From positions 1 to 64,000 of IMG/VR virus record IMGVR_UViG_3300042564_002819: DNA of 64,000 bases; one strand, written 5' to 3'. The position numbers and the translations under genes were made by a program. The notes under the pieces are model-generated. The model was not told the origin of the DNA. It searched no databases and saw nothing but the letters and a program-made list of their open reading frames with translations. This document shows, one piece after another, positions 15,707 to 46,743 of this stretch (position 1 is its first letter; every line of letters starts with the position of its first letter).

Positions 15707-18373
15707 GTGCCGTACGTTGACGCAATGTTCGATAGAGATAATGATATTATCCGATTAGTCGAACGAAAAGATGGTAAAAGAATTTATCAAGAATATCCAG
15801 TAAAATATACTTTCTATTACGGTGATCCTAAAGGCAAATATAAAAGCGTTTATGGTGATCCGCTTAGTAGAATAGTCTGCAAGAATACTAAAGACTATAG
15901 AAAAGAACTTGCAATTAACAAAAATAAAACACTATTCGAGTCTGACATTAATCCTATTTTTCAATGCTTAAGTGAAAATTATGAAAATCAAGATGCACCA
16001 AAGTTAAACGTTGCATTTTTTGACATCGAGACCGACTTTGATCCTGAGAGAGGATTCGCTCCAACAAACGATCCCTTCATGCCAATTACGGCAATTACAG
16101 TTCATTTGCAATGGTTAGATGCATTAATTACGCTGGCTGTTCCTCCAAAAACTCTCACAATGGAACAAGCTAAAGAACTTTGCGTTGAATGGGGTGACTC
16201 ATGTATACTGTTCGAAAAAGAAGCAGACATGCTTGATACATTTCTTGACTTAATACAAGACGCTGACATTTTAAGCGGTTGGAACTCAGAAGGGTATGAC
16301 GTTCCTTATACTGTAAATAGAGTAGCTCGTGTACTAAGTAAGAACGACACTAGAAGATTCTGTTTGTGGGATCAACATCCCAAAAAACGAGAATACGAAA
16401 AATATGGAAAAACTTCTGAGACATATGATTTTGTAGGCCGTGTGCATATTGACTCGCTAGAGCTTTATAGAAAATACACATACGAAGAACGTCATAGCTA
16501 TAGACTTGACGCGATCGGCGAAATGGAGATCGGCGAAAACAAAACTGTTTACGAAGGTACGCTAGATCAACTGTATAACAACGACTTTAGAACTTTTATT
16601 GAATACAACAGACAAGACGTTGCACTACTCGACAAACTAGATAAAAAACTTCGTTTTATTGATCTAGCAAATGAAATTGCACATGATAATACAGTTCTAT
16701 TGCAAACTATTATGGGTGCCGTAGCTGTTACTGAACAAGCTATTATTAACGAAGCACACAGACGAGGTATGCAAGTTCCTAACAGACGTGATCACGGCGG
16801 TAACACTCAAGCTGCCGGTGCGTATGTTGCATATCCTAAAAAAGGGTTGCATCAGTGGATTGGTTCTATGGACTTAAACAGTTTGTATCCATCTGTTATT
16901 AGAGCGTTGAACATGGCGCCAGAAAGTATCGTTGGGCAATTAAGACCTGAATATACAGATCAATATATCTACGAACAAATGACGTTGCATAAAAAGAGTT
17001 TTGCGGCAGCATGGGAAGGCCTATTTGGTACTTTTGAATATATGTGGGTTATGGAACAGCGTAGAGATAAAACAATTACAATCGACTGGGAAGACGGAAG
17101 ATCGGATGTTTTAAGCGGTGCTGAAATTTATAAATTAATGTTTGACAGCAACATGCCGTGGATGATTAGTGCCAATGGCACTATATTTACACACGAGTTT
17201 GAATCTGTTATTCCTGGATTGTTAGCTCGCTGGTATAAAGAACGTAAAGAACTACAAGCAATGCTTAAAAAAGCAAAGGATGCAGGAAACGAAACAGAAA
17301 TTTCGTTCTGGGATAAGCGACAGCTAGTTAAGAAAATTAACCTTAATAGTTTATATGGTGCTATTCTAAATCCAGGTTGCAGATTCTTTGATAAAAGAAT
17401 AGGTCAGTCAACTACACTCACCGGTAGACAGATTGCAAAACACATGGCTGGAAAAGTAAATGAAATAGTTACTGGCGATTATAACCATGTTGGACAAGCT
17501 GTAATCTACGGTGATACAGACTCTGTATATTTTAGTGCGTATCCAACACTTAAAAACGAGATCAATGCAGGAAAAATACCGTGGAGTAAAGAAAACGTTG
17601 TTACATTGTATGATCAGATTGCCAACGAAGTAAACAAAACATTTAGTGATTTTATGGGAAGTGCATTCCATTGCCCAAAAACTCGTGCCGAAGTTATTAA
17701 AGCAGGTCGCGAAATTGTAGGCGAAACTGGATTGTTTATTACTAAGAAACGCTATGCTGTTCTAGTGTATGACGAAGAAGGCAAGCGTAAAGATATCGAC
17801 GGTAAGCCAGGTAAAATAAAAGCAATGGGTCTTGATCTTAAACGCTCCGATACGCCAGTATTCATGCAAGACTTTTTGTATGATCTTTTAACTATGGTAT
17901 TGCTACAAGAACCTGAAAAAGCAATTCTCGATAGTATTACAAAATTTAGAAGAGACTTTAAATCTAGACCTGGTTACGAAAAAGGTTCTCCTAAACGTGC
18001 TAATAACATTCAAGCATATCAACGAGAAGAAGCAAAACTCGGAAGAGCTAACATGCCTGGACATGTTAGGGCAAGTATTAACTGGAATACATTAAAACGC
18101 ATGAACGGTGATCGATATTCACAAGAGATTGTTGACGGTATGAAAGTTATTGTTTGCAAGGTAAAACAAAATCCTCTAGGATTTACCAGTGTCGCATATC
18201 CAACTGACGAACTGCGTTTACCTCAGTGGTTTAAAGAATTGCCGTTTGATGATAGTGCAATGGAAGAAGTTATCATTGATAACAAGCTTGATAACCTAAT
18301 CGGAGTTCTAGATTACGATTTGCAGTCAACAAAGCAAAACACAACTTTTAATTCTTTATTTGAATGGGAATAA
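15707..18373 (+). CDS. Family B DNA polymerase (T4 gp43-like)
   Basis: Exo I FFDIETD, Exo II GWNSEGYD, Exo III YNRQDV; Pol motifs DLNSLYPS, KKINLNSLYG, YGDTDS, KKRYA; GTG start after AAGGAG; no intein. Confidence 0.96.
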   Translation: MPYVDAMFDRDNDIIRLVERKDGKRIYQEYPVKYTFYYGDPKGKYKSVYGDPLSRIVCKNTKDYRKELAINKNKTLFESDINPIFQCLSENYENQDAPKLNVAFFDIETDFDPERGFAPTNDPFMPITAITVHLQWLDALITLAVPPKTLTMEQAKELCVEWGDSCILFEKEADMLDTFLDLIQDADILSGWNSEGYDVPYTVNRVARVLSKNDTRRFCLWDQHPKKREYEKYGKTSETYDFVGRVHIDSLELYRKYTYEERHSYRLDAIGEMEIGENKTVYEGTLDQLYNNDFRTFIEYNRQDVALLDKLDKKLRFIDLANEIAHDNTVLLQTIMGAVAVTEQAIINEAHRRGMQVPNRRDHGGNTQAAGAYVAYPKKGLHQWIGSMDLNSLYPSVIRALNMAPESIVGQLRPEYTDQYIYEQMTLHKKSFAAAWEGLFGTFEYMWVMEQRRDKTITIDWEDGRSDVLSGAEIYKLMFDSNMPWMISANGTIFTHEFESVIPGLLARWYKERKELQAMLKKAKDAGNETEISFWDKRQLVKKINLNSLYGAILNPGCRFFDKRIGQSTTLTGRQIAKHMAGKVNEIVTGDYNHVGQAVIYGDTDSVYFSAYPTLKNEINAGKIPWSKENVVTLYDQIANEVNKTFSDFMGSAFHCPKTRAEVIKAGREIVGETGLFITKKRYAVLVYDEEGKRKDIDGKPGKIKAMGLDLKRSDTPVFMQDFLYDLLTMVLLQEPEKAILDSITKFRRDFKSRPGYEKGSPKRANNIQAYQREEAKLGRANMPGHVRASINWNTLKRMNGDRYSQEIVDGMKVIVCKVKQNPLGFTSVAYPTDELRLPQWFKELPFDDSAMEEVIIDNKLDNLIGVLDYDLQSTKQNTTFNSLFEWE

Positions 18374-18374
18374 T

Positions 18375-18809
18375 ATGAAAGTAGGTATAGTATTTTCAAC
18401 ATTTGATCTTCTTCATGCCGGGCATATAGGAATGCTGCGTGAAGCAAAACAACATTGCGATTATCTTATTGTAGGATTACAAACAGATCCTACAATAGAT
18501 AGGCCTACTACAAAAAATAAACCTGTGCAAACATTGGTAGAACGTTATGCACAATTAAATGCTGTTAAGTTTGTTGATGAAATTGTTCCATATCAAACCG
18601 AAGAAGACGTGATTGATATATTAGAACTTTTTGAAATTGATATAAGATTTTTAGGTGAAGAGTATCGAGAACAAGACTTTACAGGTAAAGACGTATGTCG
18701 AAAGCGTGGTATCGAACTACACTTTAATAAACGAGATCATAGATTCAGCAGTAGTGGTTTGCGTCGCAGAGTAGCAGAGGCAGAAAAAGATGCACGACAA
18801 GGATCTTGA
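18375..18809 (+). CDS. Glycerol-3-phosphate cytidylyltransferase-like (TagD family)
   Basis: STFDLLHAGH HIGH motif, LIVGLQTDP, ER..QL.AVKFVDE, SSSGLR. Confidence 0.85.
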   Translation: MKVGIVFSTFDLLHAGHIGMLREAKQHCDYLIVGLQTDPTIDRPTTKNKPVQTLVERYAQLNAVKFVDEIVPYQTEEDVIDILELFEIDIRFLGEEYREQDFTGKDVCRKRGIELHFNKRDHRFSSSGLRRRVAEAEKDARQGS

Positions 18810-18987
18810 GATTTACAACTTAATAGCACGTCTAGAAGAAAAGATTAACAATTTAATCAACTCTACTGAAAGACAAGAGCAAGAATTAACTTTGCTTAGA
18901 AATGAATTCGAACTTGTTAAAAACGAAGGTTGTTGGCTTTCTAAACAAAATCCAGATCATGTACACGGAGATTTTAAACATGAATAA
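18790..18987 (+). CDS. Small coiled-coil hypothetical protein
   Basis: 65 aa, overlap-coupled on both sides. Confidence 0.6.
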   Translation: MHDKDLEIYNLIARLEEKINNLINSTERQEQELTLLRNEFELVKNEGCWLSKQNPDHVHGDFKHE

Positions 18988-19702
18988 ATTTATCTTTGAT
19001 GTTGATGGAACATTAACTCCTAGCAGAATGCCAATTGACAAAAACTTTGCTGAATACTTTATATCTTTTTGCAATGATAATTCTGTTTATCTAGTTACCG
19101 GTTCTGACTATGCTAAAACTCTTGAACAATTAGGAGAAGACATTTGTCTTTCTGTAAAAAAAGTATACAATTGTTCCGGAAACGAAGTACGAGAAAAAGA
19201 AACATTGGTTAAATCAAGCGATTGGTCTTTATCCAAAAATGCAAAAGAATGGCTGTTAAATCAACTGTCTCAAAGTTCTTTTCCTTTAAGAACTGGCAAT
19301 CATATTGAAGAACGTACCGGAACTGTGAATTTTAGCGTTGTTGGTAGAAATGCAACTTTAAAAGAAAGAATGATGTATGTTCAATACGACCGTATGACTA
19401 ATGAACGAGAATTGATTGCAACAGATTTTAATCTTACATTTGACACATTGGATGCAAAGGTCGGTGGTGAAACAGGAATCGATATCTTTTTAAAAGGACA
19501 CGACAAACGTCAGATTATTAAAGATTTTAGTAAGCAACATAAACTTATCTTTTTTGGAGATAGGATGGATATTAAAGGAAATGATTATCCTTTAAAGAAT
19601 GAAATTGAAACTAATAACCGAGGTATTTGTTATAACGTTAAAGATTGGCAAGATACTTACGAACGGTTAATGTATTTGCAGGAGGCCAAGATAGCAGCAT
19701 GA
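18980..19702 (+). CDS. HAD-IIB phosphomannomutase (eukaryote-type PMM family)
   Basis: FIFDVDGTLT, LVTGSD, IEER.GTVNFSVVGRNA, GGETGIDI, FFGD...GNDYP. Confidence 0.85.
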   Translation: MNKFIFDVDGTLTPSRMPIDKNFAEYFISFCNDNSVYLVTGSDYAKTLEQLGEDICLSVKKVYNCSGNEVREKETLVKSSDWSLSKNAKEWLLNQLSQSSFPLRTGNHIEERTGTVNFSVVGRNATLKERMMYVQYDRMTNERELIATDFNLTFDTLDAKVGGETGIDIFLKGHDKRQIIKDFSKQHKLIFFGDRMDIKGNDYPLKNEIETNNRGICYNVKDWQDTYERLMYLQEAKIAA

Positions 19703-20454
19703 TAGTAATTGCAGGATTTGGATTTGTTGGCAAAGCGTATTACAACGCTTTTAAATCATATAGAAGCATCGAAATTGTAGACCCTAAGTATAACAACAAT
19801 AAAATAAAAGACATGGAAAAACTTAGAGGCGTAATAGTTTGTGTATCAACGCCGCAAGGAGACGACGGAAGTTGTTATATGGATAATGTTTACAATGTTG
19901 TCTCTGACGTTCCTGAACATGTTCCTATAATGATAAAAAGTACAATTAGTTTAGAGGGATGGGATCAACTAGCAGAAAAATTTCCCAATCATCAAATAAC
20001 ATTTAGCCCAGAGTTTTTACGAGCAGCAACAGCCGATGCTGATGTAAAGAATACAACTCATGTCTTTTTAGCAGGAGGAAATACTGATTACTGGAGAGAC
20101 TTTTATAGTTTTGCCTTTCCTGAAGCTAAAATTACAATATGTTTGCCACAAGAAGCAATTGCAATTAAATATTTTAGGAATTCATTTTTAGCAACAAAGT
20201 GTAGTTTCTTTAATGAAGTATACGATTTTTGTCAAGCTATTGGGCTAGATTACAACAACGTTCGCTACGGTATTGCAGCAGATTCTAGAATAGGCGATAG
20301 TCATACATTTATTGAACCACTTGCACGTGGTTGGGGCGGATATTGTTTTCCTAAAGACACTTCTGCTCTTCTAAAAATGGCAGAGAATAATAACGTAAAT
20401 CTAAATACACTTGATGCGGCAGTTAAATCTAATGATATAATTAGAAAAAAATAA
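19699..20454 (+). CDS. UDP-glucose/GDP-mannose dehydrogenase family protein (short, lacks the C-terminal domain)
   Basis: GFGFVG, CVSTP, IKST, FSPEFLR, KYFRNSFLATK..FFNE, GWGGYCFPKD with the catalytic Cys. Confidence 0.85.
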   Translation: MIVIAGFGFVGKAYYNAFKSYRSIEIVDPKYNNNKIKDMEKLRGVIVCVSTPQGDDGSCYMDNVYNVVSDVPEHVPIMIKSTISLEGWDQLAEKFPNHQITFSPEFLRAATADADVKNTTHVFLAGGNTDYWRDFYSFAFPEAKITICLPQEAIAIKYFRNSFLATKCSFFNEVYDFCQAIGLDYNNVRYGIAADSRIGDSHTFIEPLARGWGGYCFPKDTSALLKMAENNNVNLNTLDAAVKSNDIIRKK

Positions 20455-21241: not shown

Positions 21242-21649
21242 ATGGATCAGTTTGATATTACTGAATTTGCTAAAATGTTTGACGCAGCACTTGCGTCAGA
21301 CAACCCAGCAGTTAAAAAAGCACTGCGTAACTTTATGATGGTAGCTGCCATTGTTCATGCTCAAGAATTAAATGAAGATGAACGACTAATGGGTCCATTC
21401 GAGGCATTGCTTAAAAAAGTACAATCTCTTGAGAGCATGGTGCGAGAATTACAAAACAATCGTACATACAAAGACCAATATAAAGATTATTATAATTCCA
21501 ATCCAACTTGGGTATATCAACCTACCACAAGCATAAGCACTACTAGCGGTACTTCCAGTGACGCTAAAACTTGGAAAGGTACGTACAACGGCCAACCAAT
21601 CGACCCTTCTGAGATCTATGAGTTATTGAAAGATTTAAAATTTAAATGA
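21242..21649 (+). CDS. Hypothetical protein
   Basis: ATG at 21242 after AAGGAG. Confidence 0.7.
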   Translation: MDQFDITEFAKMFDAALASDNPAVKKALRNFMMVAAIVHAQELNEDERLMGPFEALLKKVQSLESMVRELQNNRTYKDQYKDYYNSNPTWVYQPTTSISTTSGTSSDAKTWKGTYNGQPIDPSEIYELLKDLKFK

Positions 21650-23211
21650 AAACAAATCTAACAGAAACACAAAACGACTACGCTGTATTCTTGCCTAGTA
21701 TCAGCGGCTTTTACGCTACATTCGTAGGCAAACAACGTTATGGAGAATATGTAGATCCGACTCGTGTTCCTGAAGGCATTGGTGAAGTAGAAGCATTAAA
21801 CTTTTTAAACCCAAGCAAAGGAGCCTTCCATTATAAGTGGGCTCTTTATAGTGCTGGACATGCGGAACTTGATACTGCTAAATTTAGTGAAAAAGAAGAT
21901 ATGCTACGCAACCGTGATAGAAACAACAGTTGGTTGCTAGGAGACTCGGGCGGGTTCCAGATTGCTAAAGGACTTTGGGAGGGCGACTGGACTGATCCAA
22001 ACTGCCCTAAAGCACAAAAGAAACGTGAATTAGTTGTAAACTGGATGGAAGCATACATGGACTATGGCATGATGCTGGATATTCCAACTTGGACTTTCCA
22101 AGATAAGAAAGCTGCAAAAGCAGCCAATATTCACAGTTATCAAGATGCAGTTGATGCTACTCACATTAACGCAAGATATTACATGGCTAATCGTCGTGGT
22201 AACTTTAAAGTGCTGAACGTATTGCAAGGCAGCAATCATGCAGATGCCGACAACTGGTATAACGAATTTAAAGATTATTGTGATCCTAAAAAATATCCAG
22301 AAACACATTTTAATGGGTGGGCTATGGGTGGCCAGAACATGTGTGATGTACATTTAATTTTACGTCGACTTGTACACATGATACACGATGGGTTGCTTGA
22401 GACTGGCGTTCACGATGTTATGCACTTCTTAGGCACTAGCAAATTAGAATGGGCAGTACTGCTTACTGACATTCAACGTGCTGTTAGAAAATATCACAAT
22501 CCTAACTTTATGATTACATACGACTGTGCAAGTCCATTCCTTGCTACTGCAAACGGACAGGTGTATCACAGCATTAGAATCGAAGATCGAGGCAAGTGGA
22601 GTTATATGATGAGTCCAAGTGCAGACGACAAGAAATATGCTACTGATACAAGACCTTTTAAAGATGCCGTTGAACAAGATGGTATATTAGAAGCATTTGA
22701 GGATTCGCCTATAAGCAAGCATCTACAAATCAAAGATGTTTGTATCTATAAACCAGGAGACCTAAATAAAGTAGGCAACGAAGGCAGAACCAGCTGGGAT
22801 AGCTTTAGCTATGCACTGCAAATGGGACACAATGTTTGGATGCATATCGAAAGTACGCAACGTGCAAATGAAAAATACGATGAAGGATTATTTCCTTACA
22901 TGTTAATAAATGAAAAGTTTGAAAGAACTACATTTAAAGATCTTGTAGATGAAATTTTTAGTCTAAAAGATAGAGCCAAGAGTCTTAAATTAATTGACGA
23001 CAATAGTAGATTTTGGATGCAGGTGATAGGAACTAGACTTAACGTTGGTAAAAAAGCTGTCAATGCTCTTACAAATTATCAAAAATTAACTGAAGAGTCA
23101 CACACAGAAATTACTAGCGAAATGCTCAGCGAAGAAGAATTAGCTCGTTGGGAGAAGAAAAAAATCAAAACAAAGTCGTATATGCCAAATGATCTATGGG
23201 AGAATAGTTAA
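21646..23211 (+). CDS. dpdA: DpdA-like 7-deazaguanine DNA transglycosylase (TGT fold)
   Basis: LLGDSGGFQI TGT motif, MMLDIP, LNVLQG, GWAMGG, MHFLG, ITYDCASP; clustered with folE, queE and a queD-like gene. Confidence 0.78.
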   Translation: MKTNLTETQNDYAVFLPSISGFYATFVGKQRYGEYVDPTRVPEGIGEVEALNFLNPSKGAFHYKWALYSAGHAELDTAKFSEKEDMLRNRDRNNSWLLGDSGGFQIAKGLWEGDWTDPNCPKAQKKRELVVNWMEAYMDYGMMLDIPTWTFQDKKAAKAANIHSYQDAVDATHINARYYMANRRGNFKVLNVLQGSNHADADNWYNEFKDYCDPKKYPETHFNGWAMGGQNMCDVHLILRRLVHMIHDGLLETGVHDVMHFLGTSKLEWAVLLTDIQRAVRKYHNPNFMITYDCASPFLATANGQVYHSIRIEDRGKWSYMMSPSADDKKYATDTRPFKDAVEQDGILEAFEDSPISKHLQIKDVCIYKPGDLNKVGNEGRTSWDSFSYALQMGHNVWMHIESTQRANEKYDEGLFPYMLINEKFERTTFKDLVDEIFSLKDRAKSLKLIDDNSRFWMQVIGTRLNVGKKAVNALTNYQKLTEESHTEITSEMLSEEELARWEKKKIKTKSYMPNDLWENS

Positions 23212-23436
23212 ATGAGTAATTATGAAGATGAAAACGACAAGTTAAAAGCCCATCTAGAAGAACTAAAAAGAAAACACAAAGATTTAGATACTTACATTAA
23301 ATCAGAATTTAATAATCAAAATTTAATTCCAGAAGTATATAAATTAAAAACACAAAAGCTATGGCTCAAAGATGAGATACACAGAATTGAAAACAAGTTA
23401 TTAAATTCCGGTAATATTGTAAATGGTACTGTCTGA
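23212..23436 (+). CDS. Small coiled-coil protein (DUF465/YdcH-like)
   Basis: L.RKH..LD..I.......LK.QKLWLKDEI pattern. Confidence 0.6.
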   Translation: MSNYEDENDKLKAHLEELKRKHKDLDTYIKSEFNNQNLIPEVYKLKTQKLWLKDEIHRIENKLLNSGNIVNGTV

Positions 23437-23596
23437 AAAAAGTTTAAAATTAGAAGCATTAGAAATTGCTTTAAAAGATTTAGATCGTATAATAGAAGCA
23501 TTAAAATCTCAAGAATATCCGCAAGAACAGATAAACGAATACGTTAAGAAACGCTGGGCTGTTTGGAATGAAATATATCAGGTAAGAAAATTATGA
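23423..23596 (+). CDS. Small hypothetical protein (57 aa, not in ORF track)
   Basis: Manual translation MVLSEKSLKLEALEIALKDL...WNEIYQVRKL*; fills the gap and couples by ATGA to the next gene. Confidence 0.6.
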   Translation: MVLSEKSLKLEALEIALKDLDRIIEALKSQEYPQEQINEYVKKRWAVWNEIYQVRKL

Positions 23597-24123
23597 AAAG
23601 AATTTATGAACAGGGAATAGAAGAACAAATACAATACTTTTTTGGTACTGAAGTAGAACACACTCCTGCATTTGGTAAAAAGACTTTGTTTGTAGTAGGA
23701 ATAAAAGATCCAGACGAAGTCACAGCAATTGCAAATTCAAATAGCGTTGATCATATCTATCTAGGTGCAAATCAAAGTTTTTCTATAACAGGTGAGCATG
23801 GTACTAACGAAGAAATAGAAGGATGGGAGAAACTAGCTATTAGCCTTTTAAAACAAGGATTTTGGGTTACGTTAGATTTTGATATACGTTATGTTGAATG
23901 GATATTAGAATCTGGCTTTACAGAATACAATCGTTTCATTCCAATGATATCTGCAAAGTTGCCTTATATTTCGCAACTTGGTTACAATGCATGTCTAAAA
24001 TTAGACGATAAAGATTTTGATGCAACAAATCCCGGTGTATGGACACACAGAGTACACGATTTGTTAGATAAAGATGTATTTACGGATTGGTCTAAGTATA
24101 CAACTGATACTATTATTAGTTGA
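23593..24123 (+). CDS. Uncharacterised protein embedded in the 7-deazaguanine cluster
   Basis: 176 aa; FFGTEVEHTP, TLFVVG, HIYLGANQSF, FIPMISAKLP, KLDD.DF..TNPGVW. Confidence 0.7.
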   Translation: MKRIYEQGIEEQIQYFFGTEVEHTPAFGKKTLFVVGIKDPDEVTAIANSNSVDHIYLGANQSFSITGEHGTNEEIEGWEKLAISLLKQGFWVTLDFDIRYVEWILESGFTEYNRFIPMISAKLPYISQLGYNACLKLDDKDFDATNPGVWTHRVHDLLDKDVFTDWSKYTTDTIIS

Positions 24124-24599
24124 CAAATGTATACGAGCGTAGTAGTATGAATTATCAAGAGCATTATTACACTTACATAGCTAGAAAACTAAGAGAAGAG
24201 AGAATGAATCAACCATTAAAAAGTATTTGGGTTACCTTCCGAAAAGAAGGCATACACTTGTATCCTGCCGCAGCAACAGATCCCAAACTTGCAACCGGTG
24301 ACTGGGACGATGTGTCGTTCCTAGGTGTTCCGCATAGGCACATTTTTCACTTTAAAGTTCGTATCGAAGTATTTCACGATGATCGAGATATTGAATTTAT
24401 TCAATTCAAGCGTTGGCTTGAAAAACTGTACAACGAAGACATTCTAGAACTTAATCACAAAAGTTGCGAAATGATCAGCGATGACTTGTATCAAGAAATT
24501 TCTGCAAGGTATCCGGGCCGCCTTGTCGAAATCGAAGTCTCCGAAGACGGAGAAAATGGCTCAATAATTTTTTATCCCACTAACAGTAACGCCACTTAA
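24120..24599 (+). CDS. QueD-like T-fold protein with LxxxHRHxF motif (DpdL-like candidate)
   Basis: FLGVPHRHIFHFKV replaces the QueD CxxxHGH motif; IEFIQFK, SCEM, VSEDGENG. True start probably downstream (24147 or 24204). Confidence 0.7.
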   Translation: MTNVYERSSMNYQEHYYTYIARKLREERMNQPLKSIWVTFRKEGIHLYPAAATDPKLATGDWDDVSFLGVPHRHIFHFKVRIEVFHDDRDIEFIQFKRWLEKLYNEDILELNHKSCEMISDDLYQEISARYPGRLVEIEVSEDGENGSIIFYPTNSNAT

Positions 24600-24611
24600 A
24601 GGAGAAATTAC

Positions 24612-24806
24612 ATGGCAATTACTAACCCTACCGTTAACAAAGTGTTTTCGGACCTTGAAGAGTTTCGTAACTTTTGTCGATTTGAAGGGCATGTGTTTAA
24701 CGAAGCAGATTTGTATAAGTCTGACGCTAGAGCGTGGCAGGCATTTACAAAGCACAGGAATTGGCTTCGTGCAAAGTCAAGAGTAAAGGTAAAGCGTAAT
24801 GCGTAA
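24612..24806 (+). CDS. Small hypothetical protein
   Basis: 64 aa after AAGGAG; DLEEFRNFCRFEGHVFNEADLY. Confidence 0.7.
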   Translation: MAITNPTVNKVFSDLEEFRNFCRFEGHVFNEADLYKSDARAWQAFTKHRNWLRAKSRVKVKRNA

Positions 24807-25962
24807 ACTATTCTATATGGGTTTAGAACCATATGAGGGTAGATACACACTTCAGTTAGAAGATTGGAGCCGTAAGGTCTTTGAACGCCGTGGCATTGAG
24901 TATATCTCGGTGCCCGGTGTTACCATTGATAACACCAAGTCTATCCAAGTTGGTCAAGTGCTTGACGCACATGGACGCTCATTCTTTAGTATGAGCCAAA
25001 TGATGAATCTTGTACAAATGATGCGTAACGGCGAAGTAACTGGCGAAGATGTAGTATTCTTTGAAGATATGTTTCAACCCGGTATCGAATCTCTTCCTTA
25101 CATTATGGATCAGATTCCAGTAGAACAGCGTCCAAAGGTTTGGGTACGTTGTCTAGCACAAACTGTTGACCCTGACGACTTTGTACACGTTTGGGGTATG
25201 AGCAAATGGATGAGTTTGTATGAAGCAATGACTAATGAATTTGTTACTGGCGTTCTTGCTAGTAATGAAGAAATGGTTGCTAATATGAAAATTGCTAACT
25301 GGCGAGCTCCTATTTACAACGTTAGCGGGCTTGCTTTTGGCAAAGAAGAAGTACAAGGTCGTGTGAAAGATATCAAACCTTGGATTGAACGTGCTAATCG
25401 TGTGGTATTTGCTGCACGGTGGGATCAAGAAAAACAACCAGACTTTTACATGGATATTGTAGAACAATGTGCAAATCACTATGTAGAATTTGCAGTCTTA
25501 CAAGGTGGCCCTCTACGTTCAAACAATCCTAAATACATTGAACGTGCAAGAGCTTTAGAAGCGGCAGGTAAACTTAAGATCTACGAAAATCTTAAGAAAA
25601 ACGACTACTACAATATTCTAAACGATAGTCGGGTGATGTTTAACTGTGCTTTGCAAGACTGGACTAGTAATACTGTTAGTGAAGCAGATGCACTTGGTTG
25701 CAATGTTCTGTTTCCTGCTTATCGCAGTTTTCCAGAAATCTTTGCAAACGATCATACAAGAATGTATGTTCCGTGGAGTAAAGAAGATGCTATGAACAAA
25801 TTGTATGCATTGCTAAAAGCACCGCATATGGATATTGGAAAGATTAGCGATTGGACCGATGCTACTATTGATCGTTACATTGACATTATGCAAGGTAACG
25901 GTGAACAATGGCGTCGTGACACTAATCGCTACAGAGACTTTGTATCGGAGAAGAAGTATTGA
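24799..25962 (+). CDS. Glycosyltransferase, GT-B fold
   Basis: C-terminal VVFAARWDQEKQP..F, YY..L.DSRV.FN...D..S.TV.EA.ALG..VL.P...SFPE pattern of GT-B (GT1/GT4-like) enzymes. Confidence 0.78.
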   Translation: MRKLFYMGLEPYEGRYTLQLEDWSRKVFERRGIEYISVPGVTIDNTKSIQVGQVLDAHGRSFFSMSQMMNLVQMMRNGEVTGEDVVFFEDMFQPGIESLPYIMDQIPVEQRPKVWVRCLAQTVDPDDFVHVWGMSKWMSLYEAMTNEFVTGVLASNEEMVANMKIANWRAPIYNVSGLAFGKEEVQGRVKDIKPWIERANRVVFAARWDQEKQPDFYMDIVEQCANHYVEFAVLQGGPLRSNNPKYIERARALEAAGKLKIYENLKKNDYYNILNDSRVMFNCALQDWTSNTVSEADALGCNVLFPAYRSFPEIFANDHTRMYVPWSKEDAMNKLYALLKAPHMDIGKISDWTDATIDRYIDIMQGNGEQWRRDTNRYRDFVSEKKY

Positions 25963-26825
25963 AAGTTTTGGTCACAGGAGCAACTGGTTATATTGGAAGC
26001 CACGTTTGCAAAATCTTAAAAGAACACGGGCACTATGTAGAGGCTTGGGATATTAACTTTTGGGGGGAATATAACGACATTTCTGCATACTGTGATCAAT
26101 TTTATCATTACGATGTAACTAAAAACGTAAAAGGTGAATTTGACGCAGTTGTGCATCTTGCTGGAAGAAGTTTAGTCGAACCTAGTATGCGAACTCCTAC
26201 AGAATATTATTTTACTAATATTCTCGGTACTTCTAACATGCTCGACTGTGTAAAAACTGGCCACTTTATTTTTGCTAGTACTAGCAGTGCTTGGGAAATG
26301 GCATCGCCTTATGCTCGCAGTAAAGTTGCGGCAGAAGATATTATTAAAGAAAAAGCTGCCGGTTATACTATTTTTAGATTTTTTAACGTAAGTGGAACAA
26401 ATGGCATCCATAGACAGCTATGTGCTCCGTCTCATCTCATACATGTAGCTGCCTTAGTTGCAGCAGGTAAACGTCCATATATTAACGTTTACGGAACAGA
26501 CTATTCTACTCGTGATGGTACTTGTATCCGCGATTACGTACATGTAGTCGATCTTGCAACCGCTATTGTAAAGGCAGTGGAAACTGGTCCTAAAAACACT
26601 CCTTATGAGTGCCTAGGCAGTAATCACGGGTGGACTGTGTTAGAAGTATTAGATACCATGGAACGTGTAACTGGTATTAATATTAATAGAATTTACGCAG
26701 ATCGTCGCCCAGGCGATGCAGTTTCTTCAGTTGTTGATAAACTAAGCGACTTTATTACTTTAGAAAAAACAATCGAAGATATGTGCTTAGACCAGTATAA
26801 CTTTGAAAGATCACGAAATGGATAA
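25959..26825 (+). CDS. galE: UDP-glucose 4-epimerase-like NAD-dependent epimerase
   Basis: VTGATGYIGSH, VHLAG, YARSK (YxxxK), FRFFNV.G, YGTDYSTRDGTCIRDYVHV.DLA, RRPGD. Confidence 0.88.
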   Translation: MKVLVTGATGYIGSHVCKILKEHGHYVEAWDINFWGEYNDISAYCDQFYHYDVTKNVKGEFDAVVHLAGRSLVEPSMRTPTEYYFTNILGTSNMLDCVKTGHFIFASTSSAWEMASPYARSKVAAEDIIKEKAAGYTIFRFFNVSGTNGIHRQLCAPSHLIHVAALVAAGKRPYINVYGTDYSTRDGTCIRDYVHVVDLATAIVKAVETGPKNTPYECLGSNHGWTVLEVLDTMERVTGININRIYADRRPGDAVSSVVDKLSDFITLEKTIEDMCLDQYNFERSRNG

Positions 26826-27147
26826 TGACGAATTTTTAAAACAGTATGAATTTATATTTTCTAACGAGGACGTTATTAATATTGATTTAAATGATATAAC
26901 ATCAAACACAATTACAGTTTCGACAATTGGCGGAACTGACAATGCAGGCCTGGTTATGACCGGCGACGGTTGGCAATGGACAACGCAGTACAACGTAGTG
27001 TTTCAAGATATAATGCCAAGCCTGAGTACTTTAAATAGCATGTGTAAAGAATATCCTGCATTAGAGAAAGCTTATGAAAATTTTAAAACAGTTTACAAAA
27101 TGGTTGAACAAGACTGGAACGGAAAACAAAAAGACAGCAACGCTTAA
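26818..27147 (+). CDS. Hypothetical protein, paralog 1 of the YPAL family
   Basis: C-terminal CKEYPALEKAYENFKTVYKMV. Confidence 0.7.
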   Translation: MDNDEFLKQYEFIFSNEDVINIDLNDITSNTITVSTIGGTDNAGLVMTGDGWQWTTQYNVVFQDIMPSLSTLNSMCKEYPALEKAYENFKTVYKMVEQDWNGKQKDSNA

Positions 27148-27601
27148 AGAAGCATATTCTGGATACAATCCAGAATATGCTTATATGAATCGCAAAAAAA
27201 CAGAGGCAGAAAAGAAGCGTTTAGAAAAATGGACAAAAGAGCTAAAAAGTATGAGTACATACAATAGCAATAATACAAATGTTTATAGTGGAGGTGGCTT
27301 TGGCGGAACAGGTTACGTGTCTGGTTACACTTTGACAAACAGCACTATTACTACTAACACTACAAATTTTTCTGATAGTGCTATTATTATCAATGGCGGA
27401 CCCAACGGTAGTATGAAGGTTGATGTTCCGTTGATTGTAAATGGCAGAGACGTTATGAAAGAACTTGACGAAATGCGTGACGCTCTGTTATTATTAAAAA
27501 GACACGTAAACATGGAAGAAAAGTATCCGCGGCTAAAAGAATTAAAAGATGAGTACGAGCAAGCTCTCGAAAAATACCAAACATTTGAGGCATTAAAATG
27601 A
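27074..27601 (+). CDS. Hypothetical protein, paralog 2 of the YPAL family (start uncertain, possibly 27251)
   Basis: Thr/Gly-rich middle; C-terminal EEKYPRLKELKDEYEQALEKY. Confidence 0.6.
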   Translation: MKILKQFTKWLNKTGTENKKTATLKEAYSGYNPEYAYMNRKKTEAEKKRLEKWTKELKSMSTYNSNNTNVYSGGGFGGTGYVSGYTLTNSTITTNTTNFSDSAIIINGGPNGSMKVDVPLIVNGRDVMKELDEMRDALLLLKRHVNMEEKYPRLKELKDEYEQALEKYQTFEALK

Positions 27602-27894
27602 TACCGGTACATGTAAACTATCAAATACCATATACTAGCAACGGGGATGAACGTGCTCACAATGGCGAAGTGCGAGCAATTAATGGACAGTTACAAGTTT
27701 ACAATGGCTCGTATTTTGTGCCTATACACACTACTGCCTGGGTTGATAATATTGAACTCGGTACTGTTGTAGAATGGTGTAAGCAGAAAATGCAACAGGA
27801 ACTGCGTGAACAAGCGTTGGCAGAACGTTTCCCTGCATTTGCTAAAGCAAAAGAAAACTATGAAATAGTAAAGGCATTAGTTCAACATGAATAA
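27598..27894 (+). CDS. Hypothetical protein, paralog 3 of the YPAL family
   Basis: C-terminal AERFPAFAKAKENYEIVKALV. Confidence 0.7.
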   Translation: MIPVHVNYQIPYTSNGDERAHNGEVRAINGQLQVYNGSYFVPIHTTAWVDNIELGTVVEWCKQKMQQELREQALAERFPAFAKAKENYEIVKALVQHE

Positions 27895-28453
27895 AACTTA
27901 TTACAGTTGGCAAGATGTTGAAACTGCCGCAAGTTGCATTATGCTCAGTATGCAAAAAGATCCCTGGTACCCAGATTGGATTGTAGGATTAAGTCGAGGC
28001 GGATTGCCTCTAGCCACTATTCTAAGTAACCGCCTTGGTGTTCCTATGCAACCTTTAGTTGTTTCTTTACGTGACGGTGAAGCTGGCTGGCAAACTGAAA
28101 CTAATTGCTGGCTTCCAGAACTTGCTTTCGGTTATGTCGAAGTAGAAGAACGTGAAATTTATCGCACCCGTTGGGATATTAGCAAACGAAAAAATATCTT
28201 AATCGTTGATGACATTAACGATACTGGTGCTACGTTCAATTGGATTAAAAAAGATTGGGAATCGAGTGTATTCCCAAATGAACGTGCTGCATGGGATACA
28301 GTATGGGACAAAAACGTTCGATTTGCTGTGATGACACAGAATTGGGGTAGTAGTTTTGAACCAGATTATTGGTGGCACGAAGTAAACAAAGCAGAAAAAG
28401 ATTGTTGGTTAGTATACCCTTGGGAGAAGGAATCATGGCTAAAAAGAACATAA
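27887..28453 (+). CDS. Type I phosphoribosyltransferase (Gpt/HPRT-like)
   Basis: IVGLSRGGL..A, PRPP-binding ILIVDDINDTGATF, WLVYPWE. Confidence 0.85.
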   Translation: MNKTYYSWQDVETAASCIMLSMQKDPWYPDWIVGLSRGGLPLATILSNRLGVPMQPLVVSLRDGEAGWQTETNCWLPELAFGYVEVEEREIYRTRWDISKRKNILIVDDINDTGATFNWIKKDWESSVFPNERAAWDTVWDKNVRFAVMTQNWGSSFEPDYWWHEVNKAEKDCWLVYPWEKESWLKRT

Positions 28454-28830
28454 CCGGACCGTGGACTGATGTAGTTATAGATACAAAAACTTACACTGTA
28501 TTTAAAGATGGTTTTCCTGTCACAGAAGGACATTTGTTGTTTGTTCCTAAAGAAGAAACAATGGAATGTTTAATGGCTTGCTACAAAGCAGCATATGCAT
28601 GGGGCTACGGCTGGATTAATGAAGGTTATTGCGACGGCTACAACATAGGTCAAAATGTAGGCAAAAGTGCAGGACAAACAGTTGATTGGCCTCACATTCA
28701 TTTAATCCCAAGAAGAACCGGCGACATGACAGACCCACGAGGCGGAGTTAGACATGTAATTCCGGAAAGAGGCAATTATAAAAAACACGAATTTGATTGG
28801 GACAATCTGTCTCATGGTCAGGCAGCATAA
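28435..28830 (+). CDS. HIT family hydrolase
   Basis: DGFPVTEGHLLFVPK, GYNIGQN.G.SAGQTVDWPHIHLIPRR.GD; start at 28435. Confidence 0.85.
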   Translation: MAKKNITGPWTDVVIDTKTYTVFKDGFPVTEGHLLFVPKEETMECLMACYKAAYAWGYGWINEGYCDGYNIGQNVGKSAGQTVDWPHIHLIPRRTGDMTDPRGGVRHVIPERGNYKKHEFDWDNLSHGQAA

Positions 28831-28842
28831 GGAGATTATACA

Positions 28843-29055
28843 ATGCAGGAATTAAGAAATACAATGCTTTCAGCTGTTAAGAAACATGCAGAAGCACACA
28901 TCGAAAAGCACCGTGTTAATATCGAAATTTATCTTCGAAATTCTGTCGGAGTTGGCGAGCATAGCGATATTATGGATGCAATTGAAAAAGAATTAGCACA
29001 CATGGCAGAATATGAAGATCATCTTGAAATTCTCGAAAAGTATTTCAAGGAATAA
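28843..29055 (+). CDS. Small hypothetical protein
   Basis: 70 aa after AAGGAG; VGVGEHSDIMDAIEKEL. Confidence 0.75.
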   Translation: MQELRNTMLSAVKKHAEAHIEKHRVNIEIYLRNSVGVGEHSDIMDAIEKELAHMAEYEDHLEILEKYFKE

Positions 29056-29060
29056 AGTTA

Positions 29061-29843
29061 GTGACAAGTATAAAATTATTTGATGTTTTATCCGAAGATG
29101 CTGTTTATAATCTAATTGGACATTGTAAAGAGTGTTGGGATTACACCTATCCTAATAGCCAAGCATTAGAAGAAGCATCATACCGTGCCCTTGCCCCTTT
29201 TTTTAAAAATTGTCAGCATTTAGGAGCAGCTAATACAATTGTTGATGTTCTAATAGATTCAAATGCTCTTGATATTAAAGGATGCAAAAAATTAACACAT
29301 ATAGGAAAAACTAATGAGTCATCGAATCACATTAAAAATAGATTTGTAGAGAAAATTTTACCAGATGGATCAAAGATTATTTTTAAGATCCCTAACCAAA
29401 TCGAAACTATGGTTAAACGACCTAAAAGAGATGTAAACAATTGGTCCGGTGATCCAAAAGGACTTGTAGAGTTGTGTTTAAAAGATTACAACGATTTTGC
29501 ATGGTCGACTGCAAAATCTGCAGGATGTAAAAATCTATACAGTCTTGTAGTATTATACGGGGAAAGCAACGGATACAGATCTATTTATGTTACGTTAAAA
29601 GAATTCTCAGTTCCACAAATCGAAACAGCTATACAAAATTCTAAAAAAAAGTATACTGGCTATGATAAAAACGGAAATGAAGTTTGTTTAATAAAAGTAA
29701 TAAGCACCGGCAGTATTAATATTCACAAATTTTTTGATACATCTGAAGGAGTATTACATACCTATCCTGTAAAAAATGGTGTACCTAAATTTTTTAATAA
29801 ATCAGATCTGTTAATAGATGGACCAATAACAAATATTAAATAA
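29061..29843 (+). CDS. Hypothetical protein, possible PD-(D/E)xK nuclease
   Basis: IVDV...ALDIKG resembles a (P)D..(D/E)xK core; AT-rich; GTG start. Confidence 0.4.
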   Translation: MTSIKLFDVLSEDAVYNLIGHCKECWDYTYPNSQALEEASYRALAPFFKNCQHLGAANTIVDVLIDSNALDIKGCKKLTHIGKTNESSNHIKNRFVEKILPDGSKIIFKIPNQIETMVKRPKRDVNNWSGDPKGLVELCLKDYNDFAWSTAKSAGCKNLYSLVVLYGESNGYRSIYVTLKEFSVPQIETAIQNSKKKYTGYDKNGNEVCLIKVISTGSINIHKFFDTSEGVLHTYPVKNGVPKFFNKSDLLIDGPITNIK

Positions 29844-29874
29844 TTTAAAAAATTACCAAATACTTTAATAAACC

Positions 29875-29903
29875 TTGACAAAAAATCTAAATAATTGTAT
29901 ACT
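29875..29903 (+). promoter_or_regulatory. Sigma70-type promoter for folE-queE-metK
   Basis: TTGACA-17nt-TATACT, near-consensus. Confidence 0.8.
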
Positions 29904-29947
29904 TATAAAGATAGGACATCCTCGTCCTTGATAACTCGGAGAAAGAA

Positions 29948-31793: not shown

Positions 31794-31859
31794 TAAAACC
31801 TCCAAATACTTTAGAGGCATACACACAGAAGAACAATTTAATAATCTAAGGAAAGATTT

Positions 31860-37905: not shown

Positions 37906-37915
37906 GGTGAGAAAT

Positions 37916-37947
37916 AAAGTGGGCGGGTTGAACTCCGCCCACTTTTT
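37916..37947 (+). terminator. Intrinsic terminator after moxR
   Basis: AAAGTGGGCGG-GTTGAACT-CCGCCCACTTT followed by T tract. Confidence 0.88.
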
Positions 37948-37958
37948 CTATCCACTGG

Positions 37959-38006: not shown

Positions 38007-38017
38007 CGAGGTATACT

Positions 38018-46182: not shown

Positions 46183-46195
46183 TTTTTCCTTTTTA

Positions 46196-46726: not shown

Positions 46727-46743
46727 AATTTTATAATTTCCTT

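What the first reader, a model, noticed from the sequence alone, without database searches (positions are those of the whole stretch)
24120..24599. QueD-like protein with LxxxHRHxF rather than CxxxHGH, and no canonical QueD or QueC in the cluster
Seen: FLGVPHRHIF, so the QueD catalytic Cys is absent; no queC, queF or arcS in 21646..32954. Known: QueD needs CxxxHGH. From memory, an LxxxHRHxF T-fold family was proposed as DpdL, a CDG decarboxylase giving 7-deazaguanine (Cui et al. 2023, NAR); this should be verified. Inference: the base may be dDG or dCDG derived, or this protein is a non-canonical QueD.
Basis: partly seen in the sequence, partly recalled or inferred. Interest (0 to 1): 0.6.

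Follow-up and report, generated by a model that had tools for sequence, protein, structure and literature searches.

The report
DpdL-type 7-deazaguanine gene in jumbo phage
The gene is a clear member of the recently named DpdL family, a QueD-like enzyme that phages are predicted to use to put 7-deazaguanine into their DNA; it sits in a full modification module of a 330-kb phage that, unusually, has no QueD gene of its own.

Summary
ORF 24120..24599 (+), probably starting at ATG 24147 or 24204, reads FLGVPHRHIF, which fits LxxxHRHxF. It is 57% identical to Acidovorax phage ACP17 gp125 and 32% to Cellulophaga phiST CGPG_00067, the two proteins Cui et al. 2023 named DpdL. Its model (pLDDT 94) matches E. 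coli QueD best. It keeps QueD's three zinc histidines and two glutamates but lacks Cys27 and Asp70-His71.

The window is the start of a 330-kb jumbo phage syntenic with Pseudomonas phage PA5oct. The module holds FolE, a QueE-like enzyme, DpdL and a 521-aa protein (21646..23211) that I identify as a divergent DpdA-like transglycosylase from its TGT fold and its DSGGFQ and FDC motifs. No QueD exists anywhere in the record, whereas all 12 cultured DpdL phage lineages have a QueD-family (PF01242) match, 11 above the curated cut-off. Canonical QueC is absent; two very divergent QueC-like proteins lie elsewhere.

Most likely DpdL acts after QueE, decarboxylating CDG to 7-deazaguanine, with the host supplying QueD. 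That activity has never been shown experimentally.

A GT4-like glycosyltransferase lies within 3 kb of dpdL in six cultured lineages, and LmbE-like/DpdL fusions recur. The final base could therefore be more elaborate than dDG.

This is a known family in a variant context.

The parts
24120..24599 (+). DpdL-family T-fold protein (QueD paralogue). The longest ORF starts at TTG 24120; likely starts are ATG 24147 (150 aa) or ATG 24204 (131 aa). Motif LGVPHRHIF; family-conserved H18, H44, H46, R61, E64, F65, S87-C88-E89, E114, D115 (131-aa numbering).
21646..23211 (+). 521-aa DpdA-like DNA/tRNA-guanine transglycosylase superfamily protein, with invariant LGDSGGFQ, LDVP and FDCASP motifs. Orthologue of PA5oct gp168.
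23212..23436 (+). Small DUF465 protein, conserved at this position in relatives (45 of 80 loci).
23593..24123 (+). 176-aa conserved partner of unknown fold ('gp122-like'). It is a homologue of ACP17 gp122 and is aligned with Phosso gene 222 (annotated 'glycosylase', only 16% identical). It is fused to DpdL in P0189.
24799..25962 (+). GT-B/GT4-like glycosyltransferase-like protein. Its family lies within 3 kb of dpdL in six cultured phage lineages.
25959..26825 (+). NAD-dependent sugar-nucleotide epimerase/dehydratase.
27887..28453 (+). Purine-type phosphoribosyltransferase (weakly XPRT/HGPRT-like). It is conserved with the module (49 of 80 loci) and also sits in the DpdA3-type cluster of L097.
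28369..28830 (+). HIT-family nucleotide hydrolase/transferase.
29948..30634 (+). FolE, GTP cyclohydrolase I, the first step to 7-deazaguanines.
30894..31793 (+). QueE-like radical-SAM CDG synthase. It has the QGEG and GCDTY motifs, with about 42 residues inserted inside the cluster-binding motif.
31860..32954 (+). MetK, S-adenosylmethionine synthetase; it would supply SAM to QueE and to the many radical-SAM enzymes of this phage.
18360..20454 (+). Three sugar-nucleotide genes between the DNA polymerase and the clamp: cytidylyltransferase-like (18360..18809), phosphomannomutase (18902..19702) and UDP-glucose/GDP-mannose dehydrogenase-like (19645..20454). The same order is seen in 346-kb and 370-kb relatives.
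56259..57014 (+). Divergent QueC-like PP-loop ATPase (SGGLDS ... CGTCWWCRERRWG) next to a radical-SAM/SPASM gene. It is probably not part of the DpdL module but bears on the claim 'no QueC'.

Best explanation
The gene encodes a DpdL-family enzyme, a zinc-binding T-fold paralogue of QueD. It belongs to a 7-deazaguanine DNA-modification module of a PA5oct-like jumbo phage.

Proposed pathway:
1. Phage FolE makes H2NTP from GTP.
2. The host's QueD makes CPH4, because the phage has no QueD. This step is inferred.
3. The phage QueE-like enzyme makes 7-carboxy-7-deazaguanine (CDG).
4. DpdL acts on this free base, most likely decarboxylating it to 7-deazaguanine. The retained His3-Zn site would hold the carboxylate and the two retained Glu would hold the 2-amino-4-oxo-pyrimidine edge. 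This step is inferred from Cui et al. 2023 and has never been shown biochemically.
5. The 521-aa DpdA-like transglycosylase encoded 0.9 kb upstream swaps the base for guanine in phage DNA.
6. The neighbouring purine phosphoribosyltransferase may recycle the released guanine into GMP and then GTP. This is speculative.

Shown here: family membership, fold, retained and lost catalytic residues, gene content and synteny. Inferred: the chemistry, the host supply of CPH4, and the identity of the base in the DNA.
For: - Sequence similarity: 57.5% identity to ACP17 gp125 and 32% to phiST CGPG_00067, the named DpdL. phmmer gives 6e-43 and 2e-11, with no hit to any QueD.
- Fold: AlphaFold model with pLDDT 94.4. 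The best Foldseek hits are E. coli QueD 4ntk/4ntm (prob 1.0, TM 0.69/0.75), followed by other PTPS structures.
- Residues: profile-profile alignment to QueD (E 1.9e-5) puts H18/H44/H46 on QueD H16/H31/H33, L40 on C27, E89 on E86 and E114 on E110. The Asp70-His71 dyad is not conserved.
- Module: FolE, QueE-like enzyme and MetK.
- DpdA-like protein: TGT fold (Foldseek prob 1.0, E 1e-7, top 50 hits all Z. mobilis TGT) plus invariant DSGGFQ and FDC motifs.
- Phyletic pattern: QueC (PF06508) is absent in 10 of 12 cultured DpdL lineages, with one weak and one above-cut-off match. All 12 have a PF01242 match. This fits an enzyme that acts after QueE and is not a QueD substitute.
- Related phages: phiST DNA is 100% dDG. 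PA5oct, which is syntenic with this phage, resists G-containing restriction sites (PMC12191111).
- A fusion of a YhhQ-family (preQ0 transporter) domain to DpdL (P0210) suggests a free 7-deazapurine base as substrate.
Against: - The decarboxylase activity is only a prediction. Cui et al. co-expressed dpdL and dpdA of phiST and ACP17 in E. coli and detected no dDG.
- A zinc T-fold decarboxylase has no precedent that I know of.
- The family has a nearly invariant Cys in an S-C-E motif that a simple decarboxylation does not obviously need.
- This genome lacks QueD, unlike all 12 cultured DpdL lineages, so the pathway needs a host enzyme of an unknown host.
- The conserved GT4-like neighbour, the sugar-nucleotide genes and the LmbE-like fusions have no role if bare dDG is the end product.
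Confidence: 0.55

Rival explanations
1. DpdL works in a longer pathway whose product is a hypermodified, possibly glycosylated, 7-deazaguanine. In PA5oct/ACP17/window-type phages DpdL, the 176-aa partner and the GT4-like enzyme act together, using NDP-sugars made by the neighbouring genes. On this reading dDG is not the final base, and DpdL's reaction may not be a plain decarboxylation.
For: - The GT4-like family lies within 3 kb of dpdL in six cultured lineages: ACP17, PA5oct, Phosso, X1, BCSR5 and cyanophage BUCT-ZZ01. It is present in 68 of 80 related IMG/VR loci.
- In ACP17 the genes run without a break: FolE, gp122, DpdA, GT-like, DpdL, QueE.
- Cytidylyltransferase-like, PMM, NDP-sugar dehydrogenase and epimerase genes sit in the same replication module.
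- Seven independent cluster representatives fuse an LmbE/PIG-L-like domain (PHxDDExIGC) to DpdL. One of these sits beside a Glycos_transf_1 gene, FolE and a 425-aa gene.
- The genome has no thymidylate-synthase-like hydroxymethylase that would offer a pyrimidine acceptor.
- PA5oct's modified G has not been identified chemically and is sensed by nucleases that target hypermodified DNA.
- The failure to obtain dDG from ACP17 dpdL plus dpdA alone fits a need for further enzymes.
Against: - phiST has DpdL without the GT-like gene and carries plain dDG.
- 7-deazaguanine has no obvious acceptor group for a sugar.
- The GT4 and PIG-L assignments rest on sub-threshold matches.
- The sugar genes could serve virion or host-surface glycosylation instead.
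- No paper in the searchable library reports a glycosylated 7-deazaguanine in DNA.
Confidence: 0.25
2. The protein is a non-canonical CPH4 synthase that replaces QueD in this phage, using the relocated conserved Cys of the S-C-E motif in place of Cys27. The DNA base would then be dCDG or a derivative made by the divergent QueC-like proteins.
For: - No QueD exists anywhere in the 330-kb record, while FolE and QueE are kept.
- The position that holds FolE and QueD in PA5oct lies inside the contig, not at an end.
- The zinc ligands and both pterin-anchoring Glu are retained.
- A nearly invariant Cys sits where PTPS has its substrate-contacting T-T-E segment.
- Two QueC-like PP-loop proteins exist in the genome.
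Against: - All 12 cultured DpdL lineages have a separate PF01242 match as well (11 above the cut-off), as do 5 of 12 large related fragments. DpdL is therefore not generally a substitute.
- The Asp-His dyad and Cys27 are missing.
- The protein does not reach the Pfam PTPS or NCBIfam QueD thresholds.
- The QueC-like proteins score 25 bits against a QueC cut-off of 150. They sit beside radical-SAM/SPASM genes 30-40 kb away and have no homologue in cultured DpdL phages.
Confidence: 0.1
3. The apparent lack of QueD is an assembly artefact: the gene lies in the roughly 7% of the genome that CheckV estimates to be missing. The module would then be an ordinary DpdL-type pathway with its own QueD.
For: - The record is 'linear' and estimated 93% complete.
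- In several relatives QueD lies 52-66 kb from dpdL, in variable regions.
Against: - Synteny with PA5oct places the FolE-QueD block between genes that map to 257 and 268 kb of this contig, which is interior sequence.
- FolE has moved into the dpdL cluster while QueD has not.
- A 256-kb relative also shows no QueD.
Confidence: 0.1

Closest known systems
DpdL (proposed 7-carboxy-7-deazaguanine decarboxylase) of Cellulophaga phage phiST (CGPG_00067) and Acidovorax phage ACP17; Cui et al. 2023, NAR 51:9214
   Same: - Same family: 32% and 57% identity.
- Same LxxxH(R)HxF signature, and the same conserved H, E, S-C-E and E-D-G-E-N blocks.
- Same QueD-like T-fold.
- Same company of FolE, QueE and a DpdA, without canonical QueC.
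   Different: - This genome has no QueD, whereas phiST, ACP17 and ten other cultured lineages all have a QueD-family match.
- The transglycosylase is a 521-aa type shared with PA5oct and Phosso. It is neither phiST's 259-aa DpdA3 nor ACP17's 424-aa type (no phmmer match).
- Unlike phiST, it has the GT4-like and 176-aa partners.
QueD, 6-carboxy-5,6,7,8-tetrahydropterin synthase (E. coli, PDB 4ntk; Pfam PF01242)
   Same: - Best structural match (TM about 0.7).
- Three zinc-binding His and two Glu occupy equivalent positions.
   Different: - Only 16-17% identity.
- Cys27 is replaced by Leu.
- The Asp70-His71 dyad is absent.
- It scores below the Pfam and NCBIfam thresholds.
- New conserved residues appear: Arg in HRH, DDRDIEF, S-C-E and EDGENG.
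Pseudomonas phage PA5oct (Wroclawvirus) gp168-gp162 region
   Same: Collinear genes: PolB, clamp, 540-aa DpdA-like, GT-like, DpdL, QueE-like, structural protein, exonuclease. PA5oct DNA carries an unidentified modified G.
   Different: - PA5oct has two PTPS-family genes and FolE about 55 kb away.
- Here FolE sits in the cluster and QueD is absent.
- Protein identities are only 22-57%.
Tubercidin/toyocamycin biosynthesis (FolE, QueD, QueE homologues plus a PRTase and a decarboxylase); recalled from memory, not checked here
   Same: It combines CDG synthesis with a phosphoribosyltransferase and a decarboxylation step.
   Different: There the decarboxylase is a UbiD-type enzyme acting on a nucleotide, not a T-fold protein. 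In addition, a DpdA-like transglycosylase here argues for base exchange in DNA.

Membership tests
DpdL (Cui et al. 2023) | Significant sequence similarity to the named DpdL proteins of phiST and ACP17, and not to QueD | tested here: met
   tblastn gives 57.5% identity (1e-38) to ACP17 gp125 and 31.9% (2e-6) to phiST CGPG_00067. phmmer gives 6.4e-43 and 2.2e-11, with QueD queries at E>6. The ACP17 gene number is my assignment from position next to QueE; the paper does not give it.
DpdL (Cui et al. 2023) | Signature LxxxHRHxF in place of the QueD signature CxxxHGH | tested here: met
   LGVPHRHIF; conserved across 37 family members and 7 phage DpdLs.
DpdL (Cui et al. 2023) | QueD-like T-fold that shares three His and two Glu with QueD | tested here: met
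   Model pLDDT 94.4; Foldseek top hits are QueD 4ntk/4ntm with prob 1.0. hhalign mapping of H18/H44/H46/E89/E114.
DpdL (Cui et al. 2023) | Encoded together with FolE, QueE and a DpdA, without QueC | tested here: met
   FolE and QueE-like enzyme. DpdA-like 521-aa protein. No canonical QueC; the QueC-like paralogues score 25 bits against a cut-off of 150.
DpdL (Cui et al. 2023) | Co-encoded with a QueD, as in the phages where the family was described | tested here: not met
   No PF01242 match at E<=1, no CxxxHG motif and no six-frame QueD-HMM hit in 330 kb. All 12 cultured lineages have a PF01242 match, 11 of them above the cut-off.
DpdL (Cui et al. 2023) | CDG decarboxylase activity, with dDG in the virion DNA | not testable with these tools
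   No biochemical proof exists for any member; the heterologous test by Cui et al. was negative.
QueD / PTPS-I (CPH4 synthase) | Catalytic Cys in CxxxHGH | tested here: not met
   Leu at the position of Cys27.
QueD / PTPS-I (CPH4 synthase) | Asp70-His71 catalytic dyad | tested here: not met
   The aligned region reads YNEDI and is not conserved in the family.
QueD / PTPS-I (CPH4 synthase) | Score above the curated Pfam PF01242 or NCBIfam thresholds | tested here: not met
   No Pfam or NCBIfam family at E<=0.01. One distant family member, P0256, reaches 23.9 bits.
DpdA / TGT superfamily (for ORF 21646..23211) | TGT TIM-barrel fold with catalytic Asp motifs (DSGGFQ; FDC) | tested here: met
   Model pLDDT 86. 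The Foldseek top 50 hits are all Z. mobilis TGT (prob 1.0, E about 1e-7, TMt 0.5-0.55). D100-S-G-G-F-Q, D145 and F-D293-C are invariant. That these are the catalytic motifs of TGT is recalled from memory, not checked against a TGT sequence here.
DpdA / TGT superfamily (for ORF 21646..23211) | Sequence-profile membership (Pfam PF01702), or similarity to a named DpdA subfamily | tested here: not met
   No PF01702 match. No phmmer match to phiST DpdA3 or to ACP17 gp123 / X1 TGT. There is only a weak tblastn link to a 'TGT domain' protein of Vibrio phage GR7B (5e-6). PF01702 also misses the transglycosylase genes (phiST CGPG_00065, X1's annotated TGT) in all 12 cultured DpdL phages, so this test is insensitive. 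DpdA1, DpdA2 and DpdA4 references were not compared.

The most novel reading that the evidence does not exclude
PA5oct-, ACP17- and window-type phages may make a 7-deazaguanine-based hypermodification that has not yet been described, possibly carrying an amino sugar. DpdL, the 176-aa partner (or an LmbE-like deacetylase domain in other lineages) and a GT4-like transferase would cooperate in making it. In that case DpdL is not simply a terminal CDG decarboxylase, and the long 521-aa transglycosylase is a new DpdA subfamily that inserts the base.
Probability: 0.2. Interest if true: 0.8.

Novelty: new member of a known kind. Interest (0 to 1): 0.45.

Why it matters
DpdL is the only proposed route to 7-deazaguanine in DNA, a base that fully replaces G in some phages and blocks restriction. 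Its chemistry has never been demonstrated.

This locus shows the family is very large: 2131 clusters at 50% identity, with close relatives in environmental contigs of up to 370 kb. It also gives three concrete handles for experiments:
- A natural genome that keeps FolE, QueE, DpdL and a DpdA-like enzyme but has lost QueD. This tests whether DpdL can or cannot replace QueD.
- A nearly invariant Cys next to the retained substrate-binding Glu.
- A conserved set of partners (GT4-like enzyme, 176-aa protein, LmbE-like fusions) that may explain why DpdL plus DpdA alone gave no product in E. coli.

The cultured relative PA5oct carries an unidentified modified G, so the question can be tested directly.

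Tried and rejected
- Direct Pfam, NCBIfam and PDB sequence searches with the DpdL protein gave nothing useful. A family profile against PDB gave only a marginal hit to P. horikoshii PTPS (E 0.07). The fold search was what settled the fold.
- Megablast of the 11-kb cluster against cultured phages found no match.
- The 260-aa ORF 29061..29843 was considered as a DpdA3 candidate because of its size. It has no PDB, Pfam or NCBIfam match and no homologue in 80 related loci, so I dropped it.
- phmmer with phiST DpdA3, ACP17 gp123 and the X1 'TGT' against all ORFs of the genome found no hit.
- A family profile of the 521-aa protein against PDB sequences found nothing. Only the structure search found TGT.
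- The 176-aa partner stays unassigned. Atlas look-alikes at 0.88 (DUF4434 and glycoside-hydrolase-like) are below the level I trust. A PDB profile search gave only a spurious repeat hit. hhalign against the LmbE-like fusion domain gave probability 0.
- A profile of the LmbE-like domain against PDB found nothing. That assignment rests on two weak Pfam PIG-L hits and the PHxDDExIGC motif.
- The two QueC-like proteins were considered as pathway members. They are far below the QueC cut-off, sit beside SPASM radical-SAM genes, and have no homologue in cultured phages.
- I tried to search the 346-kb and 370-kb relatives for QueD, but those records are not held.
- The supplementary tables of Cui et al., which list DpdL and DpdA per phage, are not held. 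I therefore could not check how they classed the PA5oct proteins.
- I could not read model coordinates, so the distance from Cys88 to the zinc site was not measured.
Full report
**What is there.** Window 24120..24599 (+) is an open frame of 159 codons. Its product contains ...SFLGVPHRHIFHF..., and the other strand is closed. The public collection holds the product as 150 aa from ATG 24147 (P0002). Homologues align only from about residue 34. ATG 24204, preceded by a purine-rich stretch, would give 131 aa. I leave the start open between 24147 and 24204. The motif fits LxxxHRHxF exactly.

**Which genome.** The window is the first 64 kb of a 330,024-bp IMG/VR virus record with 37% G+C, which CheckV estimates to be 93% complete. 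Gene order is collinear with Pseudomonas jumbo phage PA5oct over the replication module: PolB, clamp, a 540-aa protein, a GT-like protein, DpdL, QueE, a structural protein and an exonuclease. Close relatives (70-95% identity for this protein) are abundant in metagenomes, on contigs of up to 370 kb.

**Family membership.**
- tblastn against cultured phages finds 28 records.
- The phiST match is CGPG_00067, which Cui et al. 2023 named DpdL.
- The ACP17 match is gp125, next to QueE. Cui et al. tested an ACP17 dpdL but the text does not give its gene number.
- The paper states that the QueD signature CxxxHGH becomes LxxxHRHxF in DpdL. It says three His and two Glu are shared with QueD, and that co-expression of dpdL and dpdA in E. 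coli gave no dDG.
- The protein belongs to phrog_17812.
- It has 2131 representatives at E<=1e-3 in a library clustered at 50% identity.

**Fold and residues.** An alignment of 37 diverse members (A1) gave an AlphaFold model with pLDDT 94.4. Its best PDB matches are E. coli QueD (4ntk, 4ntm; prob 1.0; TM 0.69/0.75), then other PTPS enzymes. Profile-profile alignment to E. coli QueD plus three phage QueDs (E 1.9e-5), together with the multiple alignment, gives this mapping:

| DpdL (131-aa numbering) | E. coli QueD | Role in QueD |
|---|---|---|
| H18, H44, H46 | H16, H31, H33 | zinc ligands |
| L40 | C27 | catalytic Cys |
| E89 | E86 | conserved Glu |
| E114 | E110 | conserved Glu |
| not conserved | D70-H71 | catalytic dyad |

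The family also has its own conserved blocks: HRHxF, DDRDIEF, an S-C-E motif with a nearly invariant Cys, and EDGENG. The best PDB sequence match is P. horikoshii PTPS (2dj6). It aligns the S-C-E motif with the T-T-E segment of PTPS. From memory, that segment contacts the pterin in rat PTPS. I could not measure distances in the model.

**Is QueD really missing?** Several independent checks say yes for the assembled sequence.
- No PF01242 match at E<=1 in the whole record.
- No CxxxHGH in any ORF of 50 aa or more.
- No phmmer hit with three phage QueDs.
- No six-frame hit with a QueD HMM (best E 1.7).
- By contrast, all 12 cultured DpdL lineages tested have a PF01242 match, 11 of them above the cut-off. 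These are PA5oct (two copies), Phosso, X1, ACP17, RHph_I1_18, phiST, Bakedbeans, Ahp1, BCSR5, D479 (weak), BUCT-ZZ01 and MA9V-3.
- Five of 12 large related fragments and 7 of 80 loci within 10 kb also have one.
- In PA5oct the FolE-QueD-QueD block lies between genes that map to 257 and 268 kb of this contig. That is interior sequence, and it holds neither gene here. FolE has moved into the dpdL cluster.

The loss therefore looks real, although about 7% of the genome may be unassembled.

**QueC.** No canonical QueC was found. Two PP-loop proteins carry a QueC-like C-terminal CGxCWxCxERRWG motif (window 56259..57014 and genome 64977..65630). They pass the Pfam cut-off marginally but score 25 bits against 150 for the NCBIfam QueC equivalog. 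Each lies beside a radical-SAM/SPASM gene, and they have no homologue in cultured phages. Across the 12 cultured DpdL lineages, QueC (PF06508) is absent in 10, with one weak and one above-cut-off match.

**The missing DpdA.** Pfam TGT finds nothing in this genome. It also finds nothing above threshold in any of the 12 cultured DpdL phages, including those with a recognised DpdA, so that negative result is uninformative. The evidence for the 521-aa ORF 21646..23211 is as follows.
- It is conserved in 67 of 80 related loci and is the orthologue of PA5oct gp168.
- It has invariant LGDSGGFQ, LDVP and FDCASP motifs. From memory, these are the TGT catalytic signatures.
- Its atlas neighbours include TGT-like clusters at 0.93.
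- Its model (pLDDT 86) matches Z. mobilis tRNA-guanine transglycosylase in all top 50 Foldseek hits (prob 1.0, E about 1e-7).
- tblastn gives a weak link to a 538-aa 'TGT domain' protein of Vibrio phage GR7B.

I conclude that it is a DpdA-like transglycosylase of a long type. This type is shared with PA5oct and Phosso. It differs at the sequence level from phiST DpdA3 and from the ACP17/X1 type.

**Other conserved partners.**
- *The 176-aa gene upstream (23593..24123).* It is homologous to ACP17 gp122 (1.6e-12) and present in 70 of 80 loci. It is fused to DpdL in P0189. A profile that includes it also matches a separate PA5oct gene. Phosso gene 222, at the same position, is annotated 'glycosylase' but aligns only weakly (16% identity). 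I could not assign a fold to this family.
- *The 387-aa gene downstream (24799..25962).* It gives sub-threshold GT4 (Glycos_transf_1) matches. Its family profile hits GT4 structures weakly and aligns the R-x-x-P-E-K segment. This family lies within 3 kb of dpdL in ACP17, PA5oct, Phosso, X1, BCSR5 and cyanophage BUCT-ZZ01.
- *Sugar-nucleotide genes.* A cytidylyltransferase-like gene, a phosphomannomutase, an NDP-sugar dehydrogenase and an epimerase/dehydratase lie in the same module, here and in the 346-kb and 370-kb relatives.
- *LmbE/PIG-L-like fusions.* In seven independent cluster representatives DpdL carries an N-terminal domain with the PHxDDExIGC signature of LmbE/PIG-L deacetylases. One of these sits beside a Glycos_transf_1 gene, FolE and a 425-aa gene.
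- *YhhQ fusion.* One representative fuses a YhhQ-family (7-deazapurine precursor transporter) domain to DpdL.
- *Phosphoribosyltransferase.* A purine-type PRTase accompanies the module in 49 of 80 loci and also sits inside a phiST-like (DpdA3) cluster in L097.

**Most likely mechanism.** FolE, host QueD, QueE-like enzyme, DpdL and DpdA-like enzyme act in that order, with DpdL working on the free base after QueE. The retained zinc site and pyrimidine-anchoring Glu residues fit binding of CDG. The loss of the Cys and the Asp-His dyad argues against QueD chemistry. The phyletic pattern (QueD nearly always present, QueC nearly always absent) and dDG in phiST DNA support decarboxylation of CDG. I put this at about 0.55 because no activity has ever been shown. 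The conserved Cys, the GT4-like partner and the deacetylase fusions are also unexplained by that model.

The main rival, at about 0.25, is a longer pathway to a hypermodified and possibly glycosylated 7-deazaguanine. PA5oct's modified G is chemically unidentified, and I found no report of such a base. The remaining rivals are a QueD-substitute role (0.1) and an assembly gap that hides QueD (0.1).

**Novelty.** The protein is a new member of a family named in 2023. The context differs in three ways: no QueD, a long DpdA-like enzyme, and GT4-like and 176-aa partners. It is shared with the uncharacterised PA5oct group. Interest is moderate, and higher if the hypermodification reading proves right.

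Noticed in passing
window 43005..64000 and on to genome 67042 (L007): A dense island of at least 11 radical-SAM genes: 46744..47796(-), 47796..48914(-), 48980..49942(+), 49939..51417(-) with a B12 domain, 52036..53145(-), 53209..54723(+) with a B12 domain, 56998..58182(+) SPASM, 59258..60481(-), 62549..63916(-) SPASM, genome 63931..64980(-), and genome 65627..67042(-) SPASM. It also holds three PP-loop ATPases (43005..44276, 56259..57014, genome 64977..65630) and a saccharopine-dehydrogenase-like gene (44251..45600). With MetK at 31860, this looks like a large unknown modification or biosynthesis pathway.
   Followed up: partly
L001:4469-4963, L002:4781-5257, L009:6919-7497, L014-L018, L083, L092 and others: Every QueD that accompanies DpdL in phages has CxxxHGY rather than CxxxHGH, and has F/Y/H-R-Q-W/P where E. 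coli QueD has its first zinc His. These proteins therefore keep the catalytic Cys and Asp-His but lack two of the three zinc ligands. That is the mirror image of DpdL, which keeps the zinc site and lacks the Cys and the dyad. PA5oct has one extra canonical CRHLHGH copy.
   Followed up: partly
window 29061..29843 (+): A 260-aa ORF between the HIT gene and FolE has no Pfam, PHROG, NCBIfam or PDB match and no homologue in any of 80 related loci. It looks like a lineage-specific insertion into the module.
   Followed up: partly
window 30894..31793 (+): The QueE-like enzyme has CNFRC, then about 42 residues, then GCDTY. This is a long insertion inside the radical-SAM cluster motif. NCBIfam QueE models match only its first 30-65 residues.
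   Followed up: no
P0145, P0168, P0171, P0227, P0242, P0249, P0256; P0210; P0189; L107:4245-5396; L112:530-1411: Natural fusions of DpdL occur with an LmbE/PIG-L-like domain (seven representatives), with a YhhQ/Vut_1 membrane domain (one), and with the 176-aa upstream partner (one). Longer DpdL-containing ORFs are also seen in Vibrio phage Bakedbeans and Chryseobacterium phage MA9V-3.
   Followed up: partly
window 36823..39304 (+): A MoxR-type AAA ATPase is followed by a DUF2201 metallopeptidase/VWA protein. The pair is conserved in PA5oct and in the 346-kb and 370-kb relatives.
   Followed up: no
L097 (IMGVR_UViG_3300021957_002955): A compact phiST-like cluster in an environmental contig reads QueD, QueE, PRTase, FolE, DpdL and a DpdA3-like gene. 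The phosphoribosyltransferase therefore travels with the pathway in a second architecture.
   Followed up: no
L002:6306-6704 versus W04 83050-83532: ACP17 gp122 is annotated as 132 aa, but the family profile matches a 170-aa open frame that starts upstream. The annotated start is probably too far downstream.
   Followed up: no
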